From Blepharisma stoltei ATCC 30299 (taxonomy: Eukaryota > Protista > Ciliophora), in the NCBI GenBank assembly GCA_965603825.1, contig CBFDEM010000008.1, positions 1 to 64,000 on the forward strand: a stretch of DNA of 64,000 bases, in the 5' to 3' direction. Under the pieces are notes generated by a model, which was not told the DNA's origin, searched no databases, and saw only the letters and a program-made list of their open reading frames with translations. The position numbers and the translations under genes were made by a program. Shown one piece after another: positions 1 through 55,335 of this stretch (its first letter is position 1; each line of letters starts with the position of its first letter).

Positions 1-2159
1 CTAACACCCTAACACCCTAACACCACCCTAACACCCTAACACCCTAACACCCTAACACCCTAACACCCTAACACCCTAACACCCTAACACCCTAACACCC
101 TAACACCCTAACACCCTAACACCCTAACACCCTAACACCCTAACACCCTAACACCCTAACACCCTAACACCCTAACACCCTAACACCCTAACACCCTAAC
201 ACCCTAACACCCTAACACCCTAACACCCTAACACCCTAACACCCTAACACCCTAACACCCTAACACCCTAACACCCTAACACCCTAACACCCTAACACCC
301 TAACACCCTAACACCCTAACACCCTAACACCCTAACCACACCCTAACACCCTAACACCCTAACACCCTAACACCCTAACACCCTAACACCCTAACACCCT
401 AACACCCTAACACCCTAACACCCTAACACCCTAACACCCTAACACCCTAACACCCTAACACCCTAACACCCTAACACCCTAACCCTAACACCCTAACACC
501 CTAACACCCTAACACCCTAACACCCTAACACCCTAACACACCCTAACACCCTAACACCCTAACACCCTAACACCCTAACACCCTAACACCCTAACACCCT
601 AACACCCTAACACCCTAACACCCTAACACCCTAACACCCTAACACCCTAACACCCTAACACCCTAACACCCTAACACCCTAACACCCTAACACCCTAACA
701 CCCTAACACCCTAACACCCTAACACCCTAACACCCTAACACCCTAACACCCTAACACCCTAACACCCTAACACCCTAACACCCTAACACCCTAACACCCT
801 AACACCCTAACACCCTAACACCTACACCTAACACCCTAACACCCTAACACCCTAACACCCTAACACCCTAACACCCTAACACCCTAACACCCTAACACCC
901 TAACACCCTAACACCCTAACACCCTAACACCCTAACACCCTAACACCCTAACACCCTAACACCCTAACACCTAACACCCTAACACCCTAACACCCTAACA
1001 CCCTAACACCCTAACACCTAACACCCTAACACCCTAACACCCTAACACCCTAACACCCTAACACCCTAACACCCTAACACCCTAACACCCTAACACCCTA
1101 ACACCCTAACACCCTAACACCCTAACACCCTAACACCCTAACACCCTAACACCCTAACACCCTAACACCCTAACACCCTAACACCCTAACACCCTAACAC
1201 CCTAACACCCTAACACCCTAACACCCTAACACCCTAACACCCTAACACCCTAACACCCTAACACCCTAACACCCTAACACCCTAACACCCTAACACCCTA
1301 ACACCCTAACACCCTAACACCCTAACACCCTAACACCCTAACACCCTAACACCCTAACACCCTAACACCCTAACACCCTAACACCCTAACACCCTAACAC
1401 CCTACACCCTAACACCCTAACACCCTAACACCCTAACACCCTAACACCCTAACACCCTAACACCCTAACACCCTAACACCCTAACACCCTAACACCCTAA
1501 CACCCTAACACCCTAACACCCTAACACCCTAACACCCTAACACCCTAACACCCTAACACCCTAACACCCTAACACCCTAACACCCTAACACCCTAACACC
1601 CTAACACCCTAACACCCTAACACCCTAACACCCTAACACCCTAACACCCTAACACCCTAACACCCTAACACCCTAACACCTAACACCCTAACACCCTAAC
1701 ACCCTAACACCCTAACACCCTAACACCCTAACACCCTAACACCCTAACACCCTAACACCTAACACCCTAACACCCTAACACCCTAACACCTAACACCCTA
1801 ACACCCTAACACCCTAACACCCTAACACCCTAACACCCTAACACCCTAACACCCTAACACCCTAACACCCTAACACCCTAACACCCTAACACCCTAACAC
1901 CCTAACACCCTAACACCCTAACACCCTAACACCCTAACACCCTAACACCCTAACACCCTAACACCCTAACACCCTAACACCCTAACACCCTAACACCCTA
2001 ACACCCTAACACCCTAACACCCTAACACCCTAACACCCTAACACCCTAACACCCTAACACCCTAACACCCTAACACCCTAACACCCTAACACCCTAACAC
2101 CCTAACACCCTAACACCCTAACACCCTAACACCCTAACACCCTAACACCCTAACACCCT
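1..2159. repeat. Telomeric repeat tract (CCCTAACA)n, ~270 units, C-rich strand on +; left chromosome end
   Basis: Near-perfect 8-mer array from base 1 to CCCT at 2156-2159, with occasional variant units (CCTAACA, CCCTAA, CCCTACA). CCCTAACA is the heterotrich (Stentor/Blepharisma) telomere unit. Confidence 0.98.
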
Positions 2160-2582
2160 TACAGCGAATACAAATTAAACCAAATGGAGCTAAGGGCAAA
2201 ACTTGTCTGTGCAGTTACCATCTATTGTGGGCTTTATTATTTAATGGGATCATTAAGCACTCCAGCAAGTATCTTTTTCTTTATAGTGATTGCTATAGCA
2301 AATATTTATTTTTTAGTTTATTGGGCATATTATTTACTAAAATCTCTATTTTCTGCGATATTTAAGAAGGTAGGCAATTTAAGAACTAGAAGAAAAGTTC
2401 AAAGTCAGTCTGCAGTTAGAAGTCTAAGAAGCAGCCTTGAAGAATCAAGATTAGTATCAAGGAGTGTTAATCTGTCGATTATATCTAATGATAATCTATT
2501 GAGTGAAAGTCAAGCCCCTGTTAGCACTGCTAAAAATGATAAAGAAAACTTTGAAGAAAGCTCTAAAATTATCAGTGTTTAG
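2157..2582 (+). pseudogene. 3' fragment (last two TM helices plus tail) of a subfamily-B receptor gene, truncated by the telomere
   Basis: The frame runs from the junction as PYSEYKLNQMELRAKLVCAVTIYCGLYYLMGS. This aligns with NNPYNEPNLNQMELRAKCVCAITIYCGLYYLMGS (48181 gene) and NNPYTEHKLNQMKLRSKLVCVVTIYSGLYYLMGS (minus copy). The ATG at 2184 is an internal Met. Stop TAG 2580-2582. Confidence 0.92.
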
Positions 2583-2740
2583 AGAAATGAATTAGCTTAA
2601 TATAAAAAATTTTAAACTTTAGCTATAAAAATATATAAATAATAGTAATAAAAGGGGTTTAGTAATTAGGGTCAACAATACCCATTTTGAAATTGCATTC
2701 TAAATTATTTATAAAATTATTTGTTTATTTCATTGTAAAT

Positions 2741-2903
2741 TGCTAAAAAAGTAACGTATTCAGTCTTAATTATTAAAACCATATGCATAATATTTTTAAA
2801 ATGATAAAGAAAGTCTCGATTGAAGTACTTAATTATTAATTTTATGTAATTTTATTTATAAAAATTAAATTGAAATGTAATTTTTTCGTTTCATTGCATA
2901 ATA
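2741..2903 (+). promoter_or_regulatory. Conserved ~165-bp upstream block of receptor copies A1-A3 (also ~10150-10312 and ~17560-17724), with two CTTAATTATTAA motifs
   Basis: The block is retained before all three copies while the sequence further upstream differs. The motif lies at 2765/2828, 10174/10237 and 17585/17649. A regulatory function is inferred only. Confidence 0.4.
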
Positions 2904-5900
2904 ATGAATTACTTAATAGTCTTCCTTATTTTATTGGCAACTAAGGGTAAAGACCTCGAATGCCATCTATCTGTTTGCCCAGATATTAGAGTAATTTTAA
3001 TTTAGAAAGGGAATCACAAATGTGATCCTGGGTGCATGACTTCATGCTGCAACTTTGACTCAATGCTAAGTACTGATGGAAAAATTAACAAAGAAAATTC
3101 AGACTGCTATGAGACTTGCACAAATTTTGACGGCTGTAGCCCAGAAAAACTTGGAAATGGGATATGTGATGATTCTTGTAATACAGAAAACTGCGGATTT
3201 GATTGAGGAGATTGCACTTGTGCTCCTGGCTGTTTAGACTCTATGCTCGGAGATGGAAACTGTGATGAAGCTTGCAATAATTGAGACTGCGACCTTGATA
3301 ATCACGATTGTGGGCTTTGCGCAGATGGATGCTTTCCAATTATGCTTGGAAATGGAGTTTGCAACCCAGAATGCAATAATGAAGGTTGTTTATATGATTA
3401 CAAAGATTGTCAATGCGCAGAAAATTGCTTATGGACTGATTATGGAAACTGCAAACCCGAATGCATGGTAGCAAGCTGCAACTATGGCAATATGACTCAA
3501 TATCCAGATAATCAATGCCAAAACACCTCTTTAGCTATTTTTTCTTCTTATCAACAGATTATACGTAACAACTTTTCTTATATTGTGCATCTAGAAGACT
3601 GCTATGAAGCGTCAAACCACGAATGCACTCTCGAAAAAGCTTTTGATTTTGAAAATTGTTATCAAGAATGTTATATTTTTGAGTGCAACTATGCAAATGG
3701 AAACTGTGATTATGCCTGATACTCTTCATGATGCAAAGGCGTGCTTCTGAATTCTGAGGATTTTTGATGTATATCTTGTATAAGAGAATGGTTTGATACA
3801 CCTTATACTAACACCTGATTTGATGGTAAATGCGCGTTGGCTCCATCAGCATATACCGTTCCATCACTTTTTCCAGATAACACTTTTGTAGTTGTTTCTT
3901 TTATTGATACTTCTTCAGCGAAAATTCCTCATATTTACTTTGTATGTCCTATTGCAAACTCAGACCCTGATTCTGGAGATGGAAGCTACTACTCCCCCTT
4001 TAGATCCTTTTCCTTTGCTACAAATAGAATTTCACATAAATATTCAATTGTTTATTTATTGGAATGTGATGGATACAATTTAACGATTCCCTATAATGGG
4101 TTTTCAGCTGACTTTCTTGTATTTTATGATGCATATACTTTTGATGGAAAAATTGTAAAGTTTACCCCATTAAATAACTCAAAAATAACTTTAAGAAGAA
4201 ATCTAGATGATAGGGACAGTAATAACAATGACCCTTTTGGATTTTTATTTATAAAACCCTTGAGAATCGAAATAAGTAACATAATTTTCGATTGAAGCAA
4301 TACTGTTTCAACTTGCAATAATGAGAGGTATTGTGATTATTGCCCTTATGTGACATATAATTTAGAATTAAATATTAAATATAGTGATCAAGGCGAAATT
4401 ATTGATGATTTCCTTCCTTCAGACTGATGCAAAAGAGATGAAGCCCTGAATTTTATAGAACTTCGAAATGGCAATCTCATACTTAAAAATGTATCTTTTG
4501 TGAACTTCCGGAATGGCTTTAACTCTATTTTATATATAACAAATGACAGCAATGTCACTTTTAGTGATGTGACCTTTGATAATATAAAAGTAAGCGATAA
4601 TTATAATTCGTGAGCTATATGATGGGATGGGGCAAGTAAAGGAAATTTTAAATTTGAAAATGGAGTGGTAAGTAGGCTTAATAATGGATATGAGCTAAAT
4701 GATCCTATAAATACAAAGGGGTTTATGAATGCGACTAACATTAACTCGATTGTTTTAAGGAATATAGAATTTAGAAATAACGCAGTATTCAAAAACTATA
4801 TAGAAGGTGTGAGAGTTGCCTCACTATTTTTCATAAATTCATTGCAAGTTCTTTGAGTAGAATCTTGCAATTTTATATATAATTATTGTGACTTAGGAAT
4901 ATTTAATATCAAACAGCAATTGGACAATTGACCAATGGAAATTGATGATTCTGGGATTTTTATTTACTCGAAACAAAATCACATACATATTTTCAACTCG
5001 AATTTTTCATCAAATTATGGAATTACTGCTGGAGTTCTATATGCTTTATATGAGTTTGAAGGCCAGAATGTTGTCATTGAAAATTGCTCATTTACTTTAA
5101 ATGGGATTGAAAGTGGAGCTTTAATACACATTGAGAGCAATTATGCTGATGAAAGCTATTTAATAGATCGAAAAGTTAGTGTATCTATGTCTGATGGAAG
5201 CATTATTGAAGGAGACTACTTAGCGAAAAGAGTAAAGCTTTCAAATTTAAATTTTACAAAAAACTATTCTGGAGAAAACGGAGTAATCGAAATTTTAAAA
5301 ATGGTGAATATCGAATGAGTTAATATCAGGATAGAGTCAAATGGGCTCATTTTATCGGAGGCGATGAATGCCAACTCAATCCTATTAAAATATTATATAG
5401 ATAATCCAAATATGTATGCTAAACACAATGTCAGTAATCCTACTGATTTGAACTGTCAGTCCCTTTCAATGGTATCAGATTCTATTCATTTCACCATTGA
5501 GAAAGTAAACATTATTAATAACGTTTGCATGTACTCTTCTCCAAGTATCATTGTTTCTAATACAACCAAGAGTACAGTTAGGTCCACATCTTTTTATGAT
5601 AATAAAGGAGCAGGAAATTATGGCATTTGTTTAGCATTTCTTGGAGACTCACTTTACGAAATTATGAATTCTGAGTTTTATACAAACATTAATTATCAAT
5701 CAGGGAGTCCTGGAGTGATTAGTTGCCTCTCTAGCTTGTCAATAAAAAATTGCACATTTTCAAATAATATTGGCACTTTATATTTTGGAGGCCAAAATCT
5801 TAGCATTTTTTCTTCCAATTTTGATTCTAATAGTTCTCCTACATCAAATGGTGGCGCTATTTCTCTCTCAAGCGCCCAAGACAGCATATATAATTCGATG

Positions 5901-8900
5901 CTTTTTATTTCAAATACAACTTTTGCAAATAATTCTTGCTCTTTTAGTGGAGGTGCGATTTATATTGACAGAACCATTTATTTGGATTTGCTATTAGCTT
6001 TAAATATTGAAGACACAACTTTTTATCATAATAAAGCCATCGATGGCTCTTGCATCTATATAGATAATATCGTGGCACTTACTTTAGATTCTTCAATTAA
6101 GAATTGCTCTTTTTGAGCAAATGAAGCAAGCTTTTCAGGCACTATTTCTGCCTCTTATATATATGGAATATTGATTTTTGACACTTGCAATTTTGTTAGA
6201 AACTCAGGAGTTGATAGTTCAGGATTTAATATAGCTATAGGTGAAAATAAAGAAGAAAACCCTTCAAAATTAATTCTAAATTCCTGTATTTTCCAGTTTA
6301 ATTCTGGAAATAGAACTATTTCTATGGATGATGGCAATATAAACTCTACCTTAGAGGTTAATGATTGCTTGTTTGAATATAATATTGGCTCGATATTTAC
6401 ACTTGATAATGACTATGCAATTGTCGAAAACTCGAAAATTCAGCACAATTATTCTCCTAATTCTGGTTTATTCTCCTAATTCTGGTGGGGTTTTAAGTCT
6501 TAAAAACTTAGGAATTTTTATTTCTAAAGGTACGACTTATTTAAATTGTAGCAGTGATGTGAATGGAGGAGTTGCTTCCATAAGTCTGAAATCTCAATTT
6601 TTTTGTTTTTCATGTTTTTTTAGTTATAATTATGCTAGTTTGTCAGGAGGTGTAATTTATGCCGACTCGGATGCTCGGTTTTATATAGATGATTCCATTA
6701 TTAGCCAAAATTCATGCAAAAATAAAGGATCAGCCATATTTATGGCCAGTTCTTTAACTAATTCGTCAATAAACAACACAGAAATATTTGAAAATCATGC
6801 ATTTAGTGATGGAACGATATTTATTTTATCTTCCTTATTGTCTATATTTTCCTCAAAAGTTTATAAAAATAAAGCTGATGAAAAAAATCCAGGATTATAT
6901 ATTGAGGATTCAATTGCTATAATAACTGATACTCATTTTTATCAGCAAAGTGGAAATGAAGGATGCTTTATTTATCTGGGTTCAAGCTACCTAAAAATTA
7001 CTGGCTCAGCCTTTTATGAAGGTTTTTCTAACAATTCTGGAATAGCGATTCATGCAACTTCTAGTAGTGTGGAAATTTCTTCCTCAGCATTTTCTAATTT
7101 ATTTTCTAATAATGAAGGCGGAACAATTTATTTATATGAAGATAGCACTCTTTCTATCTATGACTCAGAGTTTTTAAATTCTGGATCATCAATTGATTCA
7201 TATTCAAGCTCAATTTTAATAGAAAGTACTCTATTTAAGAATCATTCAAATACTGCTATATATGCAAACCAAATTGAAGGTCTGCAAATATTAAGCTCAG
7301 AATTTTCAGACAATTATGGAAGCAATGGTGGAGCTGTATACTGCACCCAATGTCATATTATTTTAGTGACTTCGTCAACTTTTGCTAGCAACAATGGAAA
7401 AAATGGAGGAGCAATTTACGTTTCAAACTTATCAGATCATCCTGAAACCTCCCAAATTATTATTGCTTCTTCAAATTTTAATTCAAATGTAGCTGACAAT
7501 GGCGGAGCAGTCTGAACGAACAATATTAATTTAATAGTTTCCTCATCAATTTTTATAGAAAACAGAGCTGAGTTATTTCAATCAAAGAGCCTTAAAGAAA
7601 TATCAGACGGTCTAGGGGGTGCGATTAAAATAAGCTGTCAAGACTCAAATACTATTTGCAATTTTAATTTTTCATCCAATTCATTTATAAATAATAGTGC
7701 TACTTATAATGGCGGGGCCATTAACTGAGACGATTCAAAACCAACTATTGAAAATAATATTTTTGAAAATAACAAAGCATCATACGGCCCTGATATTGCA
7801 TCTTTTCCTATAATGATGATTTCTCTAAGTAATAATTCAAGAAATTTAGAAAGAAAAGTTGCTTCAGAAGATAGCAATCTAACATTAAATAATATTGCTT
7901 CAGGCCAGAATAATAATCCTCCTTTGGCTTTTATTTTAGTTGACGATCTTAACCAAATAGTTACAACAGATACTACAAGCCAAGCGCAGATAAATGCAGG
8001 AAATATTGATACAATTATATCTGGCACAACAATGGTTTATGCAAAAAATGGGATTTATTATTTTGATGACTATATAATTTCAGCTAAGCCAGGCTCTTCT
8101 GTATATATTGATATAGTTTCTTCAGCAATAGATATCCGAAAAATGAATACATCAAGAGAGAACCTCCCCATGTCATCGAGTTTTTCTTTTAATGTGAATT
8201 TGCGTTTATGCGAAGTAGGAGAAGCCACTGTTGGCTTAATTTGTGAAATTTGTCCAGAATATTATTATAATATTGATGTTAAAGTGTCTAAGTGTTTAGA
8301 CTGCCCGTCCTCTGCGATTTGCTATGGAAATTCTACAATGGTTCCAAAATCAGGATATTGAAGAGACAATAAGTTCACAGACAAGTTTTGGAAATGCCCT
8401 TATCCTCCTGCTTGCTTAGGATCTCCTAATATTTCAGATCTGGCTTTAACTGGTGTATGCAAAAAAGGATATGAAAATAACATGTGCCACTCGTGTGAAA
8501 ATGGATACTCAAGGTTATACACAGATGAATGCCAAGCTTGTCCTGATACAGTGAGCAATATTTTTAGATGAATCGGAATTTCTGCTTTTTTGATTTTTAT
8601 CTTAGTATTTATTTTAAAAACAACAAGAGACTCATGATATAAGCAAAAGTCTTTTTCTGCAGTTTATCTAAAAATCTTTTGGAATTATTTGCAAATCATG
8701 CTCATATTAGCAACTTATAACTTAAATTGGCCATACGAAGTAATTGAATTGTTTTACATTCAGACTTCTATCGATTATATAGGAGGACAGCTCTTTTCTT
8801 TTGATTGCTTTTTACAATTATCGAATTCTAAAAGCAAGATTTATTATCTAAAAATTTTGATCACAAGCTTGACTCCTTTCGTAATGGCATTTTTATGTAT

Positions 8901-9870
8901 GGCTATATGAATTTTAATTTATAAAATCAAATCAAAACGAATTAAAGAAATGAAAGACGATTATATTTCTACTTGCATTGTATTACTATTCTTAATGCAT
9001 CCAAGTATAATAAACACAATGTTCAGCGCTTTTAGTTGCAGAGAAATAAATTCCGGAGAGTTTTGGCTTAATGCAGACCTTGGAATTCGATGCTGAGATG
9101 AAAATCATCTATTTTATAGCTTAATACTCGCTCTGCCTACAATAATTATATGAATTATTGTAGTACCTTTACTTGCCTTTATAAATTTAATAAAATATCA
9201 GGAGCACTTAGAAGAAATATGAATGAAAAAGAGATATTCATTTCTATGCAACGGCTATAACTCAAAACATTATTATTGAGAATTCTTAATTTTATACTAC
9301 AAAGTGATATTAATCAGTTGCTCAGTATTTTTGTCAAATATCTCTGCAAATATTCAAGCGCTTACAGCAGGACTGTTTTTTGTGCTATTTCTTTATTTTC
9401 ATACCAGAAACGAACCATTTAATGAAGCATTTTTCAATAAAACAGAAACATTTTCTAGACTTGCGTCTCTAATATCAATACTTATTGGCCTTTGCTTTTT
9501 AACAAATGATTTGAGGGCTACTGCTAGTTATTTTTTAGTTGCCGTCTTTATAATTGCAAATTTATTATTTATATTTTACATCTTGATAAACTTCTTGCTA
9601 CAATTTGCTATTACAAATATATTTATGGCCATAATAAAAAGAATTTTCAGTTCCAAGGAGGAAAAATATATTATCAGCATTGCTCCTTATGATGAAAGTG
9701 GCCAATCTCAAAGCTACGAAGATGAAAAACATCATACAGGAAAACTTGCCAACACTATAGTATATTCTGGCCAGACACAAATTGAAAATATAAAGATGAT
9801 TAGAGAAGATTTAGGTAGTTCAAATGAAATTGACCCTTTTGCTTCAGAGCAAAGCATATCCGCTTTTTAA
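2904..9870 (+). pseudogene. Receptor copy A1 (SP, LNR repeats, Pmp-like beta-helix, Cys-rich stalk, ~9 TM), frameshifted by a 19-bp tandem duplication
   Basis: ATG 2904 (MNYLIVFLILLATKG signal peptide), intron 2991-3005, colinear with A2/A3. TTATTCTCCTAATTCTGGT is duplicated (6449-6467 and 6468-6486), giving TAA at 6477-6479 and a 1186-aa TM-less product. The shifted frame stays open (UGA=Trp) to TAA 9868-9870. Confidence 0.88.
2991..3005 (+). other. 15-nt spliceosomal intron GTAATTTTAATTTAG (phase 0)
   Basis: GTA..TAG with A at position 10, and the TAG is an in-frame stop. Removal restores the LNR spacing C-x5-G-x3-CD (CPDIRKGNHKCD). Confidence 0.93.
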
Positions 9871-10312: not shown

Positions 10313-13300
10313 ATGAATTACTTAATAGTCTTCTTTACCTTACTGGTAGCTAAGGGTAAAGACCTCGAATGCCATCTATCTGTTTGCCCAGATATTAGAG
10401 TAATTTTAATTTAGAAAGGGAATCACAAATGTGATCCTGGGTGCATGATTTCATACTGCAACTTTGACACAATGCTAAGTATTGATGGAAAAATTAACAA
10501 AGAAAATTCAGACTGCTATGAGATTTGCGCAAATTTTGACGGCTGTAGCCCAGAAAAACTTGGAAATGGGATATGTGATGATTCTTGTAATACAGAAAAC
10601 TGCGGATTTGATTGAGGAGATTGCACTTGTGCTCCTGGCTGTTTAGACTCTATGCTCGGAGATGGAAACTGTGATGAAGCTTGCAATAATTGAGACTGCG
10701 ACCTTGATAATCACGATTGTGGGCTTTGCGCAGATGGATGCTTTCCAATTATGCTTGGAAATGGAGCTTGTAACCCAGAATGCAATAATGAAGGTTGTTT
10801 ATATGATTACAAAGATTGTCAATGCGCAGAAAATTGCTTATGGACTGATTATGGAAGCTGCAAGCCCGAATGCATGGTAGCAAGCTGCAACTATGGCAAT
10901 ATGACTCAATATCCAGATAATCAATGCCAAAACACCTCTTTAGCTATTTTTTCTTCTTATCAACAGATTATACGTAACAACTTTTCTTATATTGTGCATC
11001 TAGAAGACTGCTATGAAGCGTCAAACCACGAATGCACTCTCGAAAAAGCTTTTAATTTTGAAAATTGTTATCAAGAATGCCACATTCTTGAGTGCAACTA
11101 TGCAAATGGAAACTGTGATTATGCTTGATACTCCCCATGATGCAAAGGCGTGTTTCCGGATTCTGAGGATTTTTGATGTATATCTTGTATAAGAAAATGG
11201 TTTGATACTCCTTATACTAAGACCTGAATGAATGGCAAATGCGCCTTAGCGCCATCAGTACATATCATCCCATCACTTTTTCCAGACGACACTTTTGCAG
11301 TCGTTCCTTTTATTGATACTTCTTCAGCGAAAATTCCTCATATTTACTTTGTATGTCCTATTGCAAACTCAAGTCCTGATTCTGGAGATGGAAGTTACTA
11401 CTCCCCCTTTAGATCCTTTTCCTTTGCTACAAATAGAATTTCACATAAATATTCAATTGTTTATTTATTGGAATGTGATGGATACAATTTAACGATTCCC
11501 TATAATGGGTTTTCAGCTGACTTTCTTGTATTTTATGATGCATATACTTTTGATGGAAAAAGTGTAAAGTTTACCCCATTAAATAACTCAAAAATAACTT
11601 TAAGAAGAAATCTAGATGATAGGGACAGTAATAACAATGACCCTTTTGGATTTTTATTTATAAAACCCTTGAGAATCGAAATAAGTAACATAATTTTCGA
11701 TTGAAGCAATACTGTTTCAACTTGCAATAATGAGAGGTATTGTGATTATTGCCCTTATGTGACATATAATTTAGAATTAAATATTAAATATAGTGATCAA
11801 GGCGAAATTATTGATGATTTCCTTCCTTCAGACTGATGCAAAAGAGATGAAGCCCTGAATTTTATAGAACTTCGAAATGGCAATCTCATACTTAAAAATG
11901 TATCTTTTGTAAACTTCCGGAATGGCTTTAAAACTATTTTATATATAACAACTGACAGCAATGTCACTTTTAGTGATGTGACCTTTGATAATATAAAAGT
12001 AAGCGATAATTATAATTCGTGAGTTATATGATGGGATGGGGCAAGTAAAGGAAATTTTAAATTTGAAAATGGAGTGGTAAGTAGGCTTAATAATGGATAT
12101 GAGCTAAATGATCCTATAAATACAAAGGGGTTTATGAACGCGACTAACATTAACTCGATCGTTTTAAGGAATGTGGAATTTAGAAATAATGCAATATTCA
12201 AAAACTATGTAGATGGTGTGAGAGTTGCCTCGCTATTTTTCATAAATCCGTTTCAAGTTCTTTGAGTAGAATCTTGCAATTTTATATATAATTATTGCGA
12301 CTTAGGAATATTTAATATCAAACAGCAATTGGACAATTGACCAATGGAAATTGATGATTCTGGGATCTTTATTCACTCGAAACAAAATCACATACATATT
12401 TTCAACTCGAATTTTTCATCAAATTATGGAATTACTGCTGGAGTTCTATATGTTTTATATGAGTTTGAAGGCCAGAATGTTGTCATTGAAAACTGCTCAT
12501 TTACTTTAAATGGGATTGAAAGTGGAGCTTTAATACACATTGAGAGCAATTATGCTGATGAAAGCTATTTAATAGATCGAAAAGTTAGTGTATCTATGTC
12601 TGATGGAAGCATTATTGAAGGAGACTACTTAGCGAAAAGAGTAAAGCTTTCAAATTTAAATTTTACAAAAAACTATTCTGGAGAAAACGGAGTAATCGAA
12701 ATTTTAAAAATGGTGAATATCGAATGAGTTAATATCAGGATAGAGTCAAATGGGCTCATTTTATCGGAGGCGATGAATGTCAATTCAATCCTTTTAAAAT
12801 ATTATATAGATAATCCACAAATGTATGCTAAGCACAATATCAGTAATCCTAATGATTTGAACTGCCAATCCCTTTCAATGGTATCAAATTCTATTCATTT
12901 CAGCATTGAGAAAGTAAATATTATTAATAACGTTTGCATGTACTCTTCTCCAAGTATCATTGTTTCTAATACAACCAAGAGTGCAATAAGGTCTGCATCT
13001 TTTTATGATAATAAAGGAGCTGGAAGTTATGGTATTTGTTTAGCATTTCTTGGAGATATACTTTACGAAATTATGAATTCTGAGTTTTATACAAATATTA
13101 ATTACCAATCAGGGAGTCCTGGAGCTATTAGTTGCCTCTCAAGCTTGTCAATAAAAAATTGCACATTTTCGGATAATATTGGTACTTTATATTTCGGAGG
13201 CCAAAATCTCAGCATTTTTTCTTCCAATTTTGATTCTAATATTTCTCCTTCATCAAATGGTGGCGCTATTTCTCTCTCAATCGCCCAAGACAATATATAT

Positions 13301-44000: not shown

Positions 44001-47000
44001 TCATCAATAGATAGCATAGAATCCTCTACATTTTTTATTTCAAATGCAACTTTCACAAATAATTCCTGCTCTTTTAGCGGAGGAGCAATTTATATAGAAA
44101 AAGTAAGTCCATTAGATTCGCCGTTGAAACTGCAAATATATAGCACTAATTTTTTGAATAATCAAGCTTTAGATGGCTCTTGTATTTATATAGATAACAG
44201 CTTAGGGCTTTATTCTAATTCTTCAGTTAGTGATTGCTCTTTTCAAGAAAATATAGCAAGCTTCTCAGGCACTATTTTGGCTTATTATCTCTATGGAATC
44301 CTGGTTTTTGATAACTGCGAATTTGTTAAAAATAAAGCAATTTATAGCTCCGGACTTAATATAGCTATAGGGGAAAATACTGATATAAAAAACTCAAAAA
44401 TAATTCTAAATTCTTGTACTTTTCGGTATAATTCTGGACATACAACAGTTTTTATGGATAATTCCAATATAAACTCTACCTTAGAAGTTTATGAGTCTTT
44501 ATTTGAATATAATTACGGCTCAACATTTTTACTTGACAATGACTATGCAGTTGTAAAGGACTCCAAGGTTCAGCACAATTTTTCTCCTAGCTCTGGTGGG
44601 GCATTAAATCTTAAGAACTCAGCAATATTTGAATCAAAAAGTACGATTTATTTAAACTGCAGTAGCAGCGTTAATGGCGGAGTTGCTTCTATTAGTTTAA
44701 ACTCTAAATTTATCTGTTTTTCATGTGTTTTTAGCACAAACAATGCTGATTCTTCAGGAGGTGCTATATATGCTGACTCAGATGCTGAATTTTACATTTC
44801 AGATTCCATCATTAATAAAAATTCATGTAAAAATAAAGGATCAGCCATATTTATGGCTAGCTCATCAGCTGGTTCAACAATATACAATACTGAAATTTCA
44901 GAAAACTACGCATATAATGACGGAGCTATATTTATATTATCATCATATATTTATATGCTTTCATCAAAAATTTACAAAAATACTGCCTATGGAAAAAATC
45001 CAGGCTTATATATTGATGACTCAAGTGCTATGATTTCTAATACATCGTTTTTTGACCAAAGTGGAAACCAAGGGTGTTTTATTTATATGAGCACGAGCTA
45101 TGCTAATATAATTAACTCAGCCTTTTATGAAGGTTTTTCTAATAGTTCTGGTATTGCAATACATGCGACATCTAGCAGTATCGAAATTTCTTCTTCAGGA
45201 TTTTCTAATCTTTTTTCTAATGATACTGGAGGATCAATTTACTTGTATGGAGGCAATATTCTTTCTATCAAAGACTCAGAGTTCTTGAACTCGAGCTCAT
45301 CAATAGACTCGTATTCAAGCTCTGTTTTTATAGAAAATACATTATTTAAGAATCATACAAATACAGCTATATATTTAAGCCAAATTGAGGAACTAAAAAT
45401 ATCAGGCTCGAAATTTATTAATGGTTTTGGAATTAATGGTGGGGCTGTATATTGCACACAATGCAATATTATTTTAGTCGTGGAGTCTTTATTTAATAGC
45501 AATTTAGGGATAGATGGAGGAGCAATTTATGTTGAAAATGAAGCTGATCATTCAGAAATATCTCAAATCACTATTAATTCTTCTAATTTTCAGCATAATT
45601 CAGCTAGTAATGGAGGTGCAATTTGAGCAAATAACATTAATTTGCAAATTTTATTATCAGTTTTCAACGGAAACAAAGTTGAAACATTGCTTCAATATAG
45701 CCTACAAGACATAGAAGATGGGATTGGAGGAGCAATAAAGATAGGCTGCAAAGAATCAAACTCTGTCTGCCACTTTAATATTTCATCAAGCACTTTTAAT
45801 AATAATAGTGCAAGCTATAAAGGTGGAGCAATAAGTTGGGATGATTCGAAGCCATTTTTTTACAATAATTACTTTGAAAATAATTCAGCACAGTATGGAC
45901 CAGATATCTCTTCTTTTCCAACAATGATGATTTTTCTAAACAATGAAACAAGAAACCTTCAAAGCAAAACTATATCAAATAATGGAAGCATTATAACAAT
46001 TAACAATGTTGCATCAGGCCAAACAAATAACCCTTTATTAGCTTTTGCTCTGGTTGATGATCTTTATCAAATAATTACTACAGATACTTCAAGTCAAGCA
46101 CAGATTCAAGCAATAACTGCTGATACAGTTATATCAGGCTCTACACTTACTTATGCAAAAAATGGGATTTATTATTTTGATGACTATATAATTTCAGCAA
46201 AGCCAGGCTCTTCAACTTATATTAATATAGTTTCTTCAGCAATTGATACACAAAAAATAGGCACATCGAGTGAAATTCTTGAAATGTCATCAAATTTCTC
46301 TATAGGAGTTAATTTGCGCTTATGTGAAATGGGGGAAGCTACAGTTGGACTTATTTGTGAAATTTGTCCTAAGCACTACTATAATATTGATGCTAGTAAT
46401 TCTAAGTGTTTAGAATGCCCATCGAATGCAATTTGCTATGGAAATTTTTCAATAGTCCCCAAATCAGGCTACTGAAGGGATAATATTTTGACAGATAAAT
46501 TTTGGAAATGCCCGCATCCACCAGCGTGTTTGGGCTCCCCTAGTGCTTCTAATTTATCTTTAACTGGAATTTGTGATAAAGGCTATGAAAATAATATGTG
46601 CCATTCGTGCGAATATGGTTATTCACGATTATATAGAAATGAATGTCAAATTTGCCCTGACTATGCTACTAATATTTTTAGATGGATAGGGATTTCTTTA
46701 TTTTTAGTATTTATCACAATTGTTATCTTTAAAACAACAAGAAATTCCTGATTCGAGCCGAAACATTTCTCTTCAATTTACATAAAAATATTTTGAAATT
46801 ATTCACAGATAATCATCATTATAGCAACTTATAATTTAAATTGGCCACAAGAAGTAACAGAATTTTTTTATGCCCAGACATCTTTAGATTATATTAGTCG
46901 GCAGCTGTTTTCATTTGATTGTTTCTTACAATTATCAAATTCAAAAAGCAATATTTATTATATAAAAATTTTGATAACTAGTATAACTCCATTTGCTGTA

Positions 47001-47975
47001 GGTTTGCTCTGTCTGGGATTTTGAGTTATAATATATATCATAAAAAAGAAAAGCATAAAAGAAGTTAAAGATGAGTTTATATCTACTTCAATCATTTTGC
47101 TATTTTTAATACAGCCAAGTATAATTGATACCATTTTAAATGCTTTTAGCTGTAAAGAAATTAATTCTGGAGAATATTGGCTTAATGTAGATTTAGGAAT
47201 TAGATGTTGGGATCATAATCATCTTTTTTATACTCTTTTAGTGGCTTTACCTACAATATCTATATGAGTTTTTATAGTACCTTTGCTTTGCCTTATAAAT
47301 TTGATAAAAAATAAAAATCACTTAGGAGAAACATGGATGAAAAAGAGATATGGATTTTTTTGCATTGGTTATAAGCTAAAATATTATTATTGGGAATTCG
47401 TTATTTTATTTTATAAAGTCATTTTAATTGGTATTTCCGTATTTCTATCAAATATTTCAGCAAATATTCAAGCCCTAACAGCAGTTCTTTTCTTTGCACT
47501 ATTTCTCCATATTCACTATAGGAATGAACCATTCAATGAAACATTTTTTAATAAAGCAGAAACTTTATCAAGATTAGTCTTATTAATAACAATTCTGGGT
47601 GGCCTTTGTTTTTTAACTAGTGATTGGGGTACTGCGATTACATATTTTTTACTTGTCCTTTTAATATTTCTCAATTCACTATTTATCGCATACATTTTAG
47701 CTAAGTTTTTTTTGCAATTTGAAATATTTGGCCTTATAATGATGAGGATATGGAGATTTTTCTATTCTAGAGGGAAAAAATATATAGTTGGGGTTGACTC
47801 TGCTGATGAAAGCGAGCTAGATCAGTGCCAATCTCAAAAAGATAGCGGAAAAATAGGAAACGCTTCGACAATTTCAGATAACACAAAAATTGGAATAGTT
47901 TTCAAGGAAGATTTAAGAAATTCAATAGAATTAGACCCTTTTTGCTCAATGGAAAGCATCTATACCTCAAAATAA
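41058..47975 (+). CDS. Receptor copy A5, ~2300 aa after splicing (intron 41145-41159; UGA=Trp)
   Basis: Pieces 41496, 41955, 42798, 43008, 43458, 45642, 46488 and 47283 are all in frame with ATG 41058. Same domain order. Most similar to A4. Confidence 0.9.
41145..41159 (+). other. 15-nt intron GTAATTTTAATTTAG
   Basis: 87 nt after ATG, with an in-frame TAG. Confidence 0.92.
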
Positions 47976-48180
47976 ATTTAAAAATTATCATAATAAAATT
48001 ATTTCTTCATCAATAAATATAATAAAATAACATAAAACAGTGCATATTGACATTAGAGCAAGCAACTTTTAGTTAAATATTAATGATTAATTTGTTAATC
48101 CCCAATTACTTCAGAGCTAATTTAATTTAATTTTGTTTTAAATATAAAAGATAAACAATTTTTATGATATAATTCTTTTT

Positions 48181-51100
48181 ATGAGGCTCATAGCATTCCT
48201 CTTTTTATTTCAAGTTTTAGGAATCAACATAACTTGTAACATGAATGAATGCTCCCCAATCTTCGTAGATCCTAAATAGAGAGGTGATGGCTCATGTGAT
48301 ACCCGCTGCATGCTCCCATATTGTAATTTCGACTCAAAAGAATATTACCATTCAGATCCTGAAAAATCTGATTGCATTGAAACCTGCAAATCTTTTTGCT
48401 TTTACGATCAGCCTGGTGATGGAATTTGCAAGGAAGAATGCAATAAACCATCATGTGGGTTTGATTTTGGTAATTGTGGGTATTGCGCTCCATCATGTAA
48501 TCAATATTTAGGCTTTCAGTGACAATTAGGAGGAACCTGCGATCCTGAGTGTAATACAACTTCGTGCTATTATGATTATGGAGCTTGCTTAGATTGTGCA
48601 ATTGATTGTAAGTCAAATATATGAGGAGATGGAAATTGTGATGAGGAATGCAATAACAAGGAATGCAATTTTGACAATGGAGACTGTTTAAATGTGACTT
48701 GTGCTGCTGGATGTTATAAGTGGATGATAGGAAACTCAATTTGTGATGAAGCATGCTATGTGGAAGAGTGCAATTTTGATGATTATGATTGTGATTGCTC
48801 TCCAGGCTGTGATTCTTCATTATTAGAAAATGGGGAATGTAATGAAGTTTGTAATAATGATGCCTGCGATTATGATAAAGGAGACTGTGGATACTGTGCA
48901 CGTGGTTGCTTTTTAGATATGCTAATGAATGATGTTTGTGATGATATTTGCAATACTTTTCGATGCAAATATGATTATTATGCTTGCAAATGCACAGATG
49001 GCTGTTTAGCGGAAGACTATGGAAAATGCAAACCAGAATGTTTAGTGGTTGATTGTAAGTACGACCAAATAAGCAAAGATACCCAAAAGTGATGCAATAA
49101 TACAGAACTCGTCAAGTATTCCTTTTATCAACAAATTATGACTATAGATTTTGATAGTCCAGTTAGTTTTGATCGCTGCTTAGAAGCATCTTCCCAATGC
49201 AGCTTAGCTATGTCTTTAGATTCAGAATCATGCTACCCTGAGTGCTATTATAAAGAATGCAATTTTGGCTTATGCAATTTTACATATGAATGCATGGAAC
49301 GTAATAATCCAGATTTTTGAGAATTATGCATGCCTTGCGAAGGCTATATATGGGAGGGTGAATGCTATACATTAGGCAAAACTCAATCTGTATTTATATT
49401 TGGCATTGGAGTTAGATACCCAAGCAAATTATTAGCTGCAGGGTATCCAGATTTCAGCATATTCTATGCCACTTCTACACAAGCTGGAGACCAGTCTTCT
49501 GGGGATGGAAGTGCTGATTATCCTTACGAAACCTTAGACTATGCTCTGTCATCTATGTATAAATTACAAAAAAGAACAAGTTTTTTATATTTAGCTGATG
49601 ATGGAGATTATTACTTAAACGATTGCAGTGCTTTTAGAGATGGCGGTATACATTTTGTAATAAAGGGATATGAAGGTGGCAAAGCAACTATTAAAGTAAA
49701 TGGCTGAAGTAAATTTACTTGTTTTATTATGGGAGGAGCTACTTTTGAAAATATAATTTTTGATGGGTCAAGGCAATATATTACATGCAGCGACTCAGAG
49801 TATTGCGAATATTGCTCTTATAGTACCTATAATGAAAGTGACGGTAATTACTATAATGATAGAAATCAAAATATTTCTCAGAATTTACCTATTCAGGATT
49901 GTATCAATAATCAAGGTTCTTCCCTTAGTCTTTTTTTAATGAGCCAATGCACTCTAACTCTAAAAAATGTTGAAATAAAAAATTTCCGATATAATTATGA
50001 TCACATTATAAGTGGTGATAAACTTTTGAGATTATTAAATGTTAGCTTTGACAATATACAGCTAAATGGGATGGAGAGTAGTGCAGTTATATATATGGAT
50101 ATTCCTGAACCAGATGGATTTCTTCAGATAACTTACAAAGAAGGCTCTGTAACAAGGCTAAATAATGGATATGAAATTGATGACCCAATTGACTTTAGGG
50201 GATTTTTATATGTATCCCATTCTATTTCAGTCTTGATAAAAGACGTGGAGTTCAAGTACAATTTAGTCTCTAGAAAGCCAAAAAGCACTTTAGCAAGCGC
50301 TTCATTAATTTACCTCAAAACTATAAAAGACATTGAAATAGACAATTGCACTTTTATATATAACTATTGTGAAACTGGCATTTTCTATGCTAAATTAGAA
50401 GTTAGTGAATATGAAACTATTTTTAACGAAACAAACTACTTGACATTCTTAACTTTACCTCATATCAATATTCATGATTCTAGATTTATCTCAAATTTTG
50501 GAATTTTTGGGATTATTCATATAGAGTTTTTATATAAGCTACTCAATATCAATTTAATCAATACCACATTTGAATCAAATGGTGCAGAGAGTGATTCTTT
50601 GCTTTATATATACAATCCTGCAATTATTGACGAATATAAAAATGAGACTACTATCAATATAATAAACTCTGGCCAAGGAGAACAGCTTATAATCCTATTG
50701 CCAAGATGATGCAAAATGACCAGTCTTACATTTTTGGATAATCATGCATTGAGCCTTATTAATACTACTAATTTAGTGAATTTAGATATAGAAGGCTTAA
50801 ATATTGAGTTCAATGGGTCTCCGACAGATGATAAAAATGCTAACACTTTGCTATTTAATTATTTTATTGAAAATCGAGATATTAATAAATTATATATCAG
50901 TAGCATGAAGCCCGACCCTAATCCTATTGATTGCAATTTCATGGTTTTGATAGAAAGTCCTTACAATTTTAAATTGAGGGAAATTACATTGGTGAATAAT
51001 ATATGTAGAAATTCATCTCCAACCTTTAAAATTGTTAATTCAAATATCAGAGATTTGGATTTAATTAACTGCTCTGGCAATATTGGGCATGGACAGCTGC

Positions 51101-54100
51101 CTGTATGCTTATATTTTATAGGACTTTTTGATAGAAACATTAAAAATTCGAATTTTAGTGAAAATATAAATTATCATGCATCCGGAAATGGAGTAATAAA
51201 AATAGAAGGCGAAAATAATTTATATATAACCAATTGCTTATTTTTCAACAATTCTGCAAGTTTAGCACCTTTATATTTATCAGGCAAAAGTCTTTATATT
51301 GAATTTTCGACATTTGAATCCAATGAATCAATTTATGGGAAAGGAGCAGGCTTATATTTTATTTTGGTTGATGAAGAGACATCAGCGTCAGTAATAATTT
51401 CGTCAAGCTATTTTAATAGCAATTCGGCCAACTCAAATGGAGGAGGTATATACATAGAGCAAAAGTCAACTTCTGCTATGAAGCTAGCGCTAATGATTTT
51501 TCAAACTATTTTTACCGGAAATAAAGCAAAATATGGCTCAGCCATGCATATTGATAGCTCAATTATATTAACCAAAGACTCTGCGATAGTTAGCTCTAAG
51601 TTCATAGAAAATGAGTCTACGATATCAGGAGCTATATCTTTGTATTATTATAGTGGCATTTTATCATTTCTATCATGCGATTTTATTGAAAATACTTCAC
51701 TTAAGATGGGAGCTGCTTTTCACATTGATATCTCACAAGATACTCAAAATTCCCGCTCAAAGGTTATTATTGAATCATCGATTTTCAGAAATAATATTGG
51801 AAAATATATCATTTATGCTGATAGCCAGAACAGAAACTCGTCAATTGAAACCAAAAATTGCTTATATGAATACAATAGTGGCGTTTTAGTATCACTAGAC
51901 AATGATTTTTTTATTGATAATGGCTCTGTTTTTCAATATAACTCTGCCCCTTTTGGTTCTTGCTTTAATCTTCAAAACTCAGCTATTTTATATGCAAGCT
52001 CACAGTTTTTAAATAATACCAGTTATAAATATGGAGGGGTTATTACTATGAGCTTTAAATCAATTTTTAATTGTGATAGCTGCATTTTTAGCCAGAACTC
52101 AGCTATTGGAGGTAAAGGTGGAGTTTTAGTCTCTGAGCAAGATTCTGAGTTTTTTATATCAAATTCAAGCTTTGATGAAAATTTTAGTGGCAATGATGGC
52201 TCAACTATTTTTACTTTTAACTGCAATTCTGCAACTTCTTCGATAGTAAACTCAATTTTTTTTCGAAATCGTGCATCAGGTGCAGGCGTAGTTACATTCA
52301 TAAACTCTAAAATATCTATTGTGGATTCTACATTTAAAGAAAATTCAAATGATGGACTAACATCAGGAATTAAATTAACATCCACAAATGCCAAAATTTC
52401 TAATTCAAAGTTTTTAAACCAGTCAAGCATTTCAGGGAACTTCATTTATGCTATTGCTGATAGTAATGTGGAAATACAAAATACCAGCTTTTCTAATGGA
52501 AATTCAGAAGATAGTGGAGGAGCAATTTTCTCAAGCGCGAGTCTTATGTCTATAAATTCTTCAGTTTTTACTAATTTGTCATCTCAAAAAGGAGGTGCTA
52601 TTTATTCTGTATTTGAAAGTACACTGATTATAAATAACTCTGAGTTTTCTGACCTAAAAGCTTCAGTTATAGGAGGCATTATCAATGCTAACCAAGCTTC
52701 TTTGATTATAGAAAACTCGAACTTTGATGAATTTTCTTTGACAGGAATATATGGGAAAGAGATGAAAAAATTAAATATCGCGAATTCAGGGTTTAGCAAT
52801 GGCTTTGGATCCAATGGCGGGGCAGTATATTGTGAATCTTGCAATAAAATTACTATAAATCAATCCAAATTTAATAATAACAGTGCAGCTTTATATGGTG
52901 GTGCGCTATTTTTTACAACAATAAATGAAATAAAACAAGTTCAAAATATATCTTCATGCAAATTTTCTAATAATAGTGCACAAAATGGAGGAGCAATAAA
53001 CTCAATCGATGTAAATTTACATGTTAGCTTATCAGGTTTTGAACAAAATAAAGCTGCTTCTAAGCAAGAGAATTTAAATTATGGAAATGGAGGGGGAATC
53101 TGAATTAGCTGTCCAAATATTCAGACATGCAAGTTTAAAATTCATTCAAATAACTTTGTTGAAAATACTGCAAAATACAATGGTGGAGCTATCAGTTGGG
53201 ATAATACTTTGCCTGAATTTATAAATAATTCATATAAAAATAATGCTGCTGAGTATGGAGAAAATATTGCTTCTTATCCTATTAAGCTAATGCAAGCCAA
53301 TAAAGATGGATCATTAGAAGGCTATAAAAGCAGAATACTAGCTGATTTTACATCTAATTCTAGCTTGACAGAAATAGCATCTGGACAAAATATCAAAAAT
53401 AAATTATTAGTAGCCCTAGTAGACAATATGAATAATATCATACGAACTGATAATACAAGTGAAGCAGAGCTGAAATCAACCAATTTAACTGCCCAAGTGT
53501 CAGGGAAAATTAAAGCGATAGCCAACAAAGGAATTTTTAATTTTTCTGATTTTGTTATTTCAGAAGAGCCTGGTACTGATATTCAAATTATTGTTACCTC
53601 ATCTGCAATTGATATAAATAAAATAAAAAAATCTGGAGAAACTATTTTTAGCAAAAGCTTAATTTTTGATGTGAAAATTCGAGAATGCGAAATAGGAGAG
53701 GTTAAATCAGGAAAAAATTGCGAAGTATGTCCTATAGGATTTTATAGCTTAAACCCTGAATTAATTTCATGCTTATCTTGCCCTGATGTAGCTGAATGCT
53801 ATGGAAATTATACAATAGTTCCTAAACCTGGCTATTGGAGAGACAATATGTATACAGACAAATTTTGGAAATGCCCACATTCTCCTGCTTGTCTAGGCTC
53901 TCCTGATAAAAATAATATTTCCTTAACAGGAGAATGCGAGAAAGCTTACAAAGGCAATAAATGTCAATCATGCCTAATTGGATATGTGCATACTGTGGAA
54001 AACAAGTGTGAGGAATGCCCAGATACAGCATATAATATTTTGACTATAACAGGCATAACTTTTGGACTTATGATAATTTCATTTGCAATTGTAAAAACTA

Positions 54101-55335
54101 CCAGGGAAGCTGCTTTTAGGCCAAAGTCAGTGATTTCAATATACTTAAAAATATTTTTTAATTACACACAAATGATCATTTTGGCCTCTAACTTTAAGAT
54201 GAGCTGACCAGAAGAAGTTATAAAGCTCTTTTTAGTCCAATTAAAATCAGACTATGTCTATCAGGAAATTTATTCTCTTAGTTGTCTTTTTCAAGGCGAA
54301 AATTCGCAAGATTTAGCATATTTCAGAACTCTTATCGTTGTAGCAGTAATTCCAGTTTCAATGATAATTTTATCGCTTAGCTTTTGGGCTATTTTTAAAT
54401 GGATTAAAAAAGCATATAAAAATTTTTGGGATGATTTTATATCGACGTGCATAATATTGCTGTTTTTAATACATCCAAACATAGTAAAAACTATGTTTGC
54501 ATCTATGAATTGTACAGAAATAAATGATGGAGAATACTGATTGGAAATAGATCTTGATATTATGTGTTGGGACTATGATCATATTTTTTATGTGCTTGCA
54601 GTTTCTTTGCCTTCTATTATTTTATGGGGAATTCTTTTGCCTACAATTTGTTTGATAAATCTTACGAAGAATAAAAAAAAATTAGATAACATTAGCCTTC
54701 GTCTGAGATATGGATTTCTTTTTAATGGATACAAAGAAAAGCATTTTTACTGGGAGTTTATAATTTTATACAGTAAAATCATTCTAATTTGCTGCTCAGT
54801 ATTTTTAACTAGAATCTCTTTAATACTTCAAGCCCTTATTGTATCTATTTTATACTCAATTTATCTGCATCTACAATATTTCAATAATCCTTATAATGAA
54901 CCCAACTTAAATCAGATGGAATTAAGAGCAAAGTGCGTTTGTGCAATTACTATATATTGTGGGCTTTATTATTTAATGGGCTCTGTGGGCTATATAACAA
55001 GGTATATTTTATTTATATTAATAGTCTCAGCAAATTTGTATTTTTTAATTTACTGGGCTTGGTATCTCTTAAAAGAAGTTTTAGCAAAAATAAATAAATT
55101 TATTAGGAGTTGGATAAATAAAAGCAGAATAAGCAGTCAAGGAAAAGAAAGTCACTTAAATAATAAAGACCTAGAAGACTCGAAAAATATTTTTAGCCAA
55201 AGAGAAAATATATCAATTTCATCAAATGATAACTTTTTATGGGAAAACCAAATTTTGAGTAAAGATCCGGTTGAATACAGTCAAATTGAAACAAGAAAAA
55301 ATTTCGAGCTAGTTTCTGAGGAGCTAAGTAGCTAA
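48181..55335 (+). CDS. Receptor copy B3 (subfamily B, about 7 canonical plus 2 degenerate LNR repeats), ~2379 aa after splicing (intron 48265-48279; UGA=Trp)
   Basis: ATG 48181 (MRLIAFLFLFQVLG). Pieces 48310, 48694, 49138, 49330, 49729, 50716, 53209 and 54541 are in one frame. Motifs GDGSADYPY, GGAI/FxxN and RYGFLFNGYKEKHFYWE. Stop TAA 55333-55335. Confidence 0.91.
48265..48279 (+). other. 15-nt intron GTAGATCCTAAATAG
   Basis: Homologous position, in-frame TAG, A at position 10. Removal gives CSPIFRGDGSCD. Confidence 0.88.

What the first reader, a model, noticed from the sequence alone, without database searches (positions are those of the whole stretch)
2157..55335. Subtelomeric array of eight giant LNR, Pmp-beta-helix, 9TM receptor genes evolving by birth and death
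Seen: eight paralogues in two subfamilies fill 53 kb next to the telomere (A: 2904, 10313, 17725, 33392, 41058; B: 2157 fragment, 32162 inverted, 48181). Four look intact and four are broken. Subfamilies differ in LNR number (about 4+2 versus 7+2 degenerate). Established: LNR repeats are disulfide-bonded, Ca-binding modules of Notch; GGA[ILV]/FxxN repeats mark the right-handed beta-helix of chlamydial Pmp adhesins; large Pmp-like/Cys-rich/multi-TM proteins occur in protists but are mostly uncharacterised. Inference: a diversified surface recognition or signalling receptor repertoire (prey, mate, pathogen or self sensing), organised like subtelomeric variant-surface families. I do not know of a described function for this domain combination.
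Basis: partly seen in the sequence, partly recalled or inferred. Interest (0 to 1): 0.85.

Follow-up and report, generated by a model that had tools for sequence, protein, structure and literature searches.

The report
Notch-repeat CRMP receptor cluster in Blepharisma
The window holds one of about 28 gene clusters that encode roughly 70 giant cell-surface proteins in the ciliate Blepharisma; they are Notch-repeat-tipped relatives of the CRMP sensors that trigger secretory-organelle discharge in Toxoplasma and Tetrahymena, and the cluster is not really 'subtelomeric'.

Summary
The genes are real: seven full-length paralogues (four intact, three frameshifted) and a 3' fragment cut by telomere addition, in the Blepharisma stoltei macronuclear genome. 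Architecture: signal peptide, LNR array (4+2 or 7+2), variable furin-like segment, long beta-helix, Ig domain, Eph/TNFR-like Cys repeats, nine TM helices. The Cys+9TM core is that of the CRMP family (TgCRMPa/b, PCRMP1-4, Paramecium and Dictyostelium members; Tetrahymena CRMP knockouts block mucocyst discharge). That match was made motif by motif by eye, with no E-value. 'Subtelomeric' is not supported: about 73 genes lie in 28 clusters on 18 contigs, about 70% far from ends, and contig ends here are alternative telomere-addition sites. Birth-and-death is supported (dN/dS 0.16-0.38, mosaic A1-A3, pseudogenes, relics). The LNR architecture also occurs in Stentor and many metagenomes; the expansion is Blepharisma-specific. 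I found no paper on LNR-bearing CRMPs. Best guess: diversified contact sensors coupled to extrusome release; no expression data were obtained. The scan noted this family on other contigs of this genome, without the CRMP link.

The parts
1..2159 (.). Telomere, 8-bp CCCTAACA repeat, about 270 copies; a contig end made at an alternative telomere-addition site
2157..2582 (+). 3' end of a B-type gene (TM8, TM9, tail; 141 codons, open to its stop), cut by telomere addition; no identical continuation elsewhere in the MAC assembly
2904..9870 (+). A1: intron 2991-3005; frameshift from a 19-bp tandem duplication at 6449-6486
10313..17263 (+). A2, intact, 2311 aa (CAG9312596.1); intron 10400-10414
10370..11137 (+). 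A2 LNR array (3 canonical Ca-type repeats, 1 with an insertion, 2 degenerate)
11138..11335 (+). A2 degenerate furin-like, hypervariable segment (dN/dS 0.6-1.3 in the A and B clades)
11336..15190 (+). A2 right-handed parallel beta-helix with N-cap and Pmp-type GGA[ILV]/FxxN repeats
15191..15601 (+). A2 Ig-like domain, with a basic R-x-L loop at its start
15599..15934 (+). A2 Eph/TNFR-like Cys repeat and DUF7630/EGF-like module (first half of the CRMP core)
15938..17014 (+). A2 nine-TM bundle (CRMP / PF06011-like); cytosolic tail follows to 17263
17725..24675 (+). A3, intact, 2311 aa (CAG9312597.1); intron 17812-17826
25049..32162 (-). Binv, B-type pseudogene: stops at 31949 and 30391; frameshifts near 31407, 30720, 30254, 29884 and 28423; C-terminal 1124 codons still open; 11 germline inserts
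33392..40308 (+). A4: one frameshift (net 7-bp deletion near 35438-35455; not an intron, not an IES junction)
41058..47975 (+). A5, intact, 2300 aa; intron 41145-41159
48181..55335 (+). B, intact; introns 48265-48279 and 48497-48511; 7+2 LNR
54673..54777 (+). B, TM5-TM6 loop and TM6: 15 of 35 residues identical, without gaps, to TgCRMPA (GFLxNG...YWE signature); counted by eye

Best explanation
These are CRMP-family (cysteine repeat modular protein) cell-surface receptors of a heterotrich subtype with an LNR tip, expanded to about 70 copies in Blepharisma by local tandem duplication, gene conversion and pseudogenisation. Shown here: signal peptide, extracellular LNR array, furin-like segment, about 1,300-residue beta-helix rod, Ig domain, Cys-rich CRMP core, nine TM helices, short cytosolic tail; purifying selection; a variable patch at the LNR/furin-like/helix-cap tip. 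Inferred: the rod holds the Ca2+/disulfide-stabilised tip away from the membrane; the tip and helix groove bind surface glycans or proteins of other cells (predators, prey, conspecifics), each paralogue with its own specificity; binding is passed through the 9TM core, probably as a TM heterodimer as in TgCRMPa/b, to the cortical exocytosis machinery, and releases extrusomes (blepharismin pigment granules) or starts a related cortical response.
For: Domains. CRMP core motifs of our consensus match TgCRMPA, PbCRMP1/2 and the Paramecium CRMP XP_001426280 in order, by eye. Our profile scores Tetrahymena and Paramecium proteins of that type at E 1e-51 to 1e-90. CRMP definition, 9 TM, beta-helix and Ig members, expansion in free-living alveolates and TM heterodimers: PMC9815656. 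TtCRMP1/2 knockouts impair mucocyst discharge: PMC9670195. A profile that includes Tetrahymena and Paramecium rows finds essentially only this family in the genome. Heterotrichs discharge extrusomes on predator-prey contact: PMC9774955. Selection pattern.
Against: The link to TgCRMPA has no computed E-value. TtCRMP1/2 are reported with five TMs and may be a different branch from the expanded beta-helix families. Singer et al. suggest that expanded free-living CRMPs serve various sensing roles, not only exocytosis. Tails (85-150 aa) are much shorter than in TgCRMPs (478 and 565 aa). The variable segment is not significantly above dN/dS 1, so relaxed constraint explains it as well.
Confidence: 0.5

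Rival explanations
1. Mating-related recognition: some paralogues are the unidentified gamone 1 receptor or pair-formation proteins, like the furin-like/TM proteins MTA/MTB.
For: Gamone 1 is a glycoprotein whose receptor is still putative (PMC10892320). Blepharisma-specific expansion and a variable tip.
Against: Two mating types do not need 70 receptors. Single-copy homologues sit among housekeeping genes in Stentor and metagenome contigs. No mating-type or stage expression data.
Confidence: 0.12
2. The 9TM domain is itself a Ca2+-permeable or mechanosensitive channel or transporter of the fungal Pkd2/Flc (PF06011) kind, gated by the rod.
For: PF06011 hits in 15 of 86 members, best E 6e-7; Atlas neighbours carry PF06011.
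Against: All hits lie below or near the curated cut-off; no match to solved TRP channels; no pore was tested. This may be how the best explanation works rather than an alternative.
Confidence: 0.15
3. Non-signalling adhesin, coat protein or membrane-anchored glycan-cleaving enzyme for prey capture.
For: The N-terminal helix superposes on polysaccharide lyases, tailspikes and adhesins at Z 20-24.
Against: The fold is shared by all beta-helices, with 8-17% identity. The TM core is among the most conserved parts (dN/dS 0.18, invariant W/E/P/C), more than a plain anchor needs.
Confidence: 0.13
4. Subtelomeric variant-surface-antigen family with mutually exclusive expression.
For: Array at a contig end; weak end bias; variable tip.
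Against: About 70% of genes are internal; contig ends are curated telomere-addition sites; the telomere cuts a gene; strong purifying selection.
Confidence: 0.05
5. A1-A3 are mis-assembled alleles of one locus.
For: 92-95% nucleotide identity, tandem 7.4-kb units.
Against: The strain's heterozygosity is 3e-5. Copies differ at 5-8% of sites with dN/dS 0.3. They carry different germline IES sets: A1 and A2 share two diverged IESs (79-84% alike) that A3 lacks.
Confidence: 0.02

Closest known systems
CRMP family (TgCRMPa TGGT1_261080, TgCRMPb, Plasmodium CRMP1-4; PMC9815656, PMC9670195)
   Same: Eph-receptor-like and EGF-like Cys modules directly before nine TM helices; same motif order through the core, closer to the CRMPA clade by eye; N out, C in; large modular ectodomain.
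   Different: One Eph-like repeat rather than many; no Kringle or MAR domain; LNR array plus long beta-helix instead; short tail; about 70 paralogues rather than 2-4.
Beta-helix CRMP-like proteins of free-living protists (Dictyostelium Q86I19, Paramecium XP_001426280, large Tetrahymena/Paramecium 'transmembrane protein, putative' families)
   Same: Beta-helix + Ig + Cys + TM core; lineage-specific expansions in tandem; HMM matches at E 1e-51 to 1e-90 for the Tetrahymena examples scored.
   Different: They start with beta-propeller, EGF or furin-like regions; no LNR in the Tetrahymena example scanned.
Tetrahymena TtCRMP1/2 (TTHERM_00442310, TTHERM_00637180)
   Same: Ciliate Cys-rich multipass proteins named as CRMPs; needed for extrusome discharge.
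   Different: Five predicted TMs and a GAIN-like domain reported; orthology to this family not tested.
Notch negative regulatory region (also LNRs of pappalysin and GNPTAB)
   Same: LNR repeats with G[DN]GxC[DN]..C and [FYW]DxxDC motifs; PDB hits E 1e-8 to 1e-11.
   Different: No HD/SEA domain, EGF array, single TM or ankyrin tail; LNRs are at the distal tip, not next to the membrane.
Chlamydial Pmp adhesins
   Same: GGA[ILV]/FxxN beta-helix repeats (PF02415).
   Different: No autotransporter barrel; eukaryotic 9TM anchor.
Fungal Pkd2/Flc TRP-like proteins (PF06011)
   Same: Weak family hits on the TM domain; nine helices.
   Different: No ML-like domain; giant ectodomain; scores below the cut-off in window proteins.

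Membership tests
CRMP (Singer et al. 2023 conserved core) | Eph-like / EGF-like Cys modules directly before the TM domain | tested here: met
   PF07699 above cut-off in B and A5; DUF7630 in 41 of 86 relatives; EphA2 hit
CRMP (Singer et al. 2023 conserved core) | Nine TM helices | tested here: met
   AF2 model, mean pLDDT 93.5, nine long helices plus a luminal disulfide hairpin
CRMP (Singer et al. 2023 conserved core) | Sequence homology of the core to named CRMPs | tested here: met
   By eye only: ordered motif match to TgCRMPA, PbCRMP1/2 and XP_001426280; 15 of 35 identical in one ungapped block. No E-value, because those sequences had no tool reference.
CRMP (Singer et al. 2023 conserved core) | TM-mediated A/B heterodimer | not testable with these tools
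   No multimer prediction. The local A and B clades are sister groups inside Blepharisma, not the apicomplexan A/B split.
CRMP (Sparvoli et al. 2022) | Required for regulated organelle discharge | not testable with these tools
   Needs knockdown
Apicomplexan CRMPA clade (strict) | Kringle/MAR domain and multiple Eph-like repeats | tested here: not met
   None in Pfam scans; paper domain table
Notch receptors | LNR followed by HD domain, single TM, ankyrin repeats | tested here: not met
Chlamydial Pmp autotransporters | C-terminal beta-barrel | tested here: not met
   C-terminus is helical 9TM
PF06011 TRP-like (Pkd2/Flc) | Score above the Pfam gathering cut-off | tested here: inconclusive
   B piece 13.9 bits against 28.5; 15 of 86 relatives hit at E<0.01
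Subtelomeric variant-surface families | Members concentrated at true chromosome ends | tested here: not met
   about 21 of 73 genes in clusters within 60 kb of a contig end, P about 0.06 by cluster; ends are telomere-addition sites
Subtelomeric variant-surface families | Mutually exclusive, switching expression | not testable with these tools

The most novel reading that the evidence does not exclude
Blepharisma uses about 70 LNR-tipped CRMPs as a combinatorial recognition repertoire: linked A- and B-clade paralogues pair through their 9TM cores, and the LNR cap gates the receptor in a Ca2+- or force-dependent way, so that contact with specific predators, prey or mates (possibly gamone 1) triggers extrusome release. 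This would be an innate 'immune-like' receptor system in a single cell and a free-living model for how the Toxoplasma/Plasmodium invasion trigger senses its ligand.
Probability: 0.12. Interest if true: 0.85.

Novelty: new variant of a known kind. Interest (0 to 1): 0.52.

Why it matters
How CRMPs sense contact and signal is open: no ligand, no solved structure and no downstream partner are known. A heterotrich branch with a compact core that models well, a Notch-type tip and dozens of natural variants gives material for mapping the specificity-bearing part. It also gives named candidates for two old Blepharisma questions: what triggers pigment-granule discharge, and what the gamone 1 receptor is. 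The subtelomeric claim should be dropped.

Tried and rejected
A telomere pattern search did not give contig lengths; several right-end distances are estimates from the MAC+IES contig lengths times 0.76, and six contigs stay unknown. CRMP sequences in the paper's supplement have no tool reference; I did not type them, so that alignment step is left out and the match is by eye. Three homologue searches did not return a named apicomplexan CRMP. Spliced models were built only in local scripts; searches used exon pieces or database proteins. The 9TM bundle has no PDB match, but it was searched within a 680-residue model, not alone. Rejected: frameshifts as hidden 16-nt introns; A1 and A4 frameshifts as IES-excision errors (no IES at either site); a universal furin site (the basic loop is missing in the C30 clade); positive selection (pooled dN/dS 0.62 in the variable segment). 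Paper searches for ciliate + LNR + Pmp, Stentor + LNR domain and CRMP + extrusome found nothing; the genome papers do not mention Notch or LNR.

Full report
Source. The window is G000:C8:1-64000 of a 41,464,486-bp, 64-contig assembly with CCCTAACA telomeres, TGA read as Trp and 15/16-nt introns. Database copies of the proteins are labelled Blepharisma stoltei. This is the ATCC 30299 macronuclear genome.

Observation. A2, A3, A5 and B are intact. A1 has a 19-bp tandem duplication at 6449-6486. A4 has a net 7-bp deletion near 35438. Binv has two nonsense codons and about five frameshifts. None of these is a hidden intron. The A1 and A4 breaks do not lie at IES junctions in the MAC+IES assembly; two Binv breaks lie 10-12 bp from one. 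The fragment at 2157-2582 is an open reading frame for TM8, TM9 and the tail, joined to the telomere at a CCT microhomology, so it was cut, not decayed. No identical continuation exists in the MAC assembly.

Not subtelomeric. The genome paper states that chromosome ends are meaningless here: telomeres are added at about 46,700 alternative sites, molecules average 130 kb, and contig ends were trimmed and capped by hand (10.1101/2021.12.14.471607). Searches with three parts of B and with a profile find about 73 genes plus at least six relics, in 28 clusters on 18 contigs. The largest are internal: C30:77-154 kb of 636 kb, C36:123-181 kb of 1,052 kb, C51 about 85-125 kb from its end (estimate). 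Left ends alone show some excess (7 of 28 clusters within 60 kb, P 0.012). With both ends, as far as known, it is 9 of 28 against 18.5% expected (P 0.06). Tandem arrays also break assemblies, so this weak bias is not evidence of chromosome-end biology.

Architecture. Pfam gives LNR (PF00066), Beta_helix, Chlam_PMP, Ephrin_rec_like, DUF7630 and a weak PF06011. The N-terminal profile hits Notch NRR, GNPTAB and pappalysin LNRs, and the R-spondin furin-like repeat just after them. AF2 of the N-terminal 744 residues of an A-type paralogue (pLDDT 79, pTM 0.76) shows a beta-helix from about residue 313 that superposes on lyases, tailspikes and adhesins (Z up to 24, identity 8-17%); this shows the fold only. 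AF2 of the C-terminal 680 residues of Binv (pLDDT 93.5) shows the helix end, an Ig-like domain (Z 8.7), two Cys-rich modules and nine TM helices with a luminal disulfide hairpin. There is no solved relative of the TM bundle. Atlas models with TM-score about 0.6 come from chlorophytes, haptophytes, cnidarians, sponges and ciliates, with other ectodomains.

Family. The order Eph-like Cys repeat, EGF-like module, nine TMs is the 'conserved core' that defines CRMPs (PMC9815656). That paper's set includes a beta-helix member from Dictyostelium and a Paramecium member, and notes large expansions in Chromera and Paramecium. Reading the published cores against our consensus, the motifs match in order: the CP..ACL and C..C..GY cysteine pattern, S..I..KI..NY in TM2, S.DC, W..G.P in TM5, GFL.NG...YWE before TM6, and P[FY]...L..E before TM8. 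One ungapped 35-residue block of B (54673-54777) is identical to TgCRMPA at 15 positions by my count. This step is by eye. The computed part of the chain is that our profile scores Tetrahymena proteins of that type at E 1e-51 to 1e-76 and an environmental one at 1e-90, and a Tetrahymena member retrieves many Paramecium ones. TgCRMPa/b are needed for rhoptry discharge, and knockouts of two Tetrahymena CRMPs impair mucocyst discharge (PMC9670195).

Range and history. 3,193 clusters match the C-terminal module at E<=1e-3, 208 at 1e-30. Many full-length ones carry LNRs, including Stentor coeruleus SteCoe_7231. The Stentor and metagenome copies I looked at stand alone among housekeeping genes. All 40 Blepharisma rows form one branch with one environmental row (SH-aLRT 99, quick tree), so the expansion is lineage-specific. 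A and B are sister clades within it and share contigs repeatedly (C8, C36, C53, C39 and a contig that is probably C23); two other clades form pure arrays (C30; C51 and part of C39). Co-duplication of neighbours explains this without any pairing, but it fits the CRMP heterodimer idea.

Birth and death. Outside the window, three or four of 19 loci read are broken, against three of seven inside. Pooled dN/dS over four independent close pairs: LNR 0.22, furin-like segment 0.62, helix N-half 0.38, C-half 0.28, Ig 0.29, Cys 0.16, TM 0.18, tail 0.35. The furin-like segment reaches 0.6-1.3 in A and B pairs but 0.1-0.3 in C30 pairs. A1-A3 are mosaic: in one 300-bp block A1 and A2 differ at 1 site and both differ from A3 at 44, while elsewhere A2 is closest to A3, as expected from gene conversion or unequal crossing-over. 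They are paralogues, not alleles: the strain is nearly homozygous and the copies carry different IES sets.

Mechanism. Shown: domain order, predicted topology, constraint on the core, variability at the tip. From known families: LNRs bind Ca2+; CRMPs act at the surface upstream of organelle discharge and dimerise through their TMs; heterotrichs release extrusomes on predator-prey contact (PMC9774955). Inferred: each paralogue is a rod-shaped contact sensor with its own tip specificity, coupled to cortical exocytosis. I put membership in the broad CRMP family at about 0.9 and this functional reading at about 0.5. Rivals are a channel role for the TM domain, a plain adhesin or enzyme, and mating recognition (the gamone 1 receptor is still putative).

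Limits. No computed alignment to named CRMPs. Gene counts are lower bounds.

Verdict. A real, well-conserved receptor family; a new variant (LNR-tipped, heterotrich-type, expanded in Blepharisma) of the known CRMP kind; not subtelomeric. Interest 0.52.

Noticed in passing
window 26314, 27288, 28368, 29043, 30632, 30729 (L025); also 3899 (L030) and 33974 (L031): Germline inserts of 382-690 bp, GC 0.38-0.54, bounded by 6-13-bp direct repeats; the six in Binv are unlike each other and several start AATAAAATGG. Eight lie in the three broken genes and at most one (54154) in the four intact ones (P about 0.007, post hoc). They may be a class of insert that is poorly excised and tolerated only in dead genes.
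   Followed up: partly
window 9209/16599 and 9322/16712: A1 and A2 share two IESs at homologous sites (79% and 84% alike) that A3 lacks; this orders the germline duplications.
   Followed up: yes
window 15200-15230 (A2) and equivalents: Basic R-x-L loop at the beta-helix/Ig junction in the A and B clades, absent in the C30 clade; a possible convertase site.
   Followed up: partly
window 60000-61400 (-): Decayed non-LTR retrotransposon reverse transcriptase: DLRKAFD at 61289 and YADD at 61143; fits the MAC retroelement relics described in PMC9942856.
   Followed up: partly
window 56500-56900 (-): Two decayed ubiquitin repeats.
   Followed up: partly
window 57590-59480 (-): Kinase + coiled coil + MORN-repeat gene that looks broken in the kinase part.
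   Followed up: partly
window 62613-64000 (-): 3'-5' exonuclease (PF01612) with a CCHC zinc knuckle, EXD3/Mut-7-like; its 3' end is partly duplicated at 62330-62491.
   Followed up: partly
window 55374-55556 and 62199-62342 (-): Two similar short ORFs (80% DNA identity over 158 bp); also noted by the first stage.
   Followed up: no
G000 C57:380-385 kb, C20:304/410/696 kb, C48:295-297 kb, C41:399 kb, C18:8.5 kb: Other LNR-array proteins without the CRMP core nearby.
   Followed up: no
L017 and neighbours (C30:118.5-126.8 kb); L009 (C36:162-167 kb): Unrelated tandem gene families (about 800 aa and 610-770 aa) sit inside the CRMP clusters.
   Followed up: no
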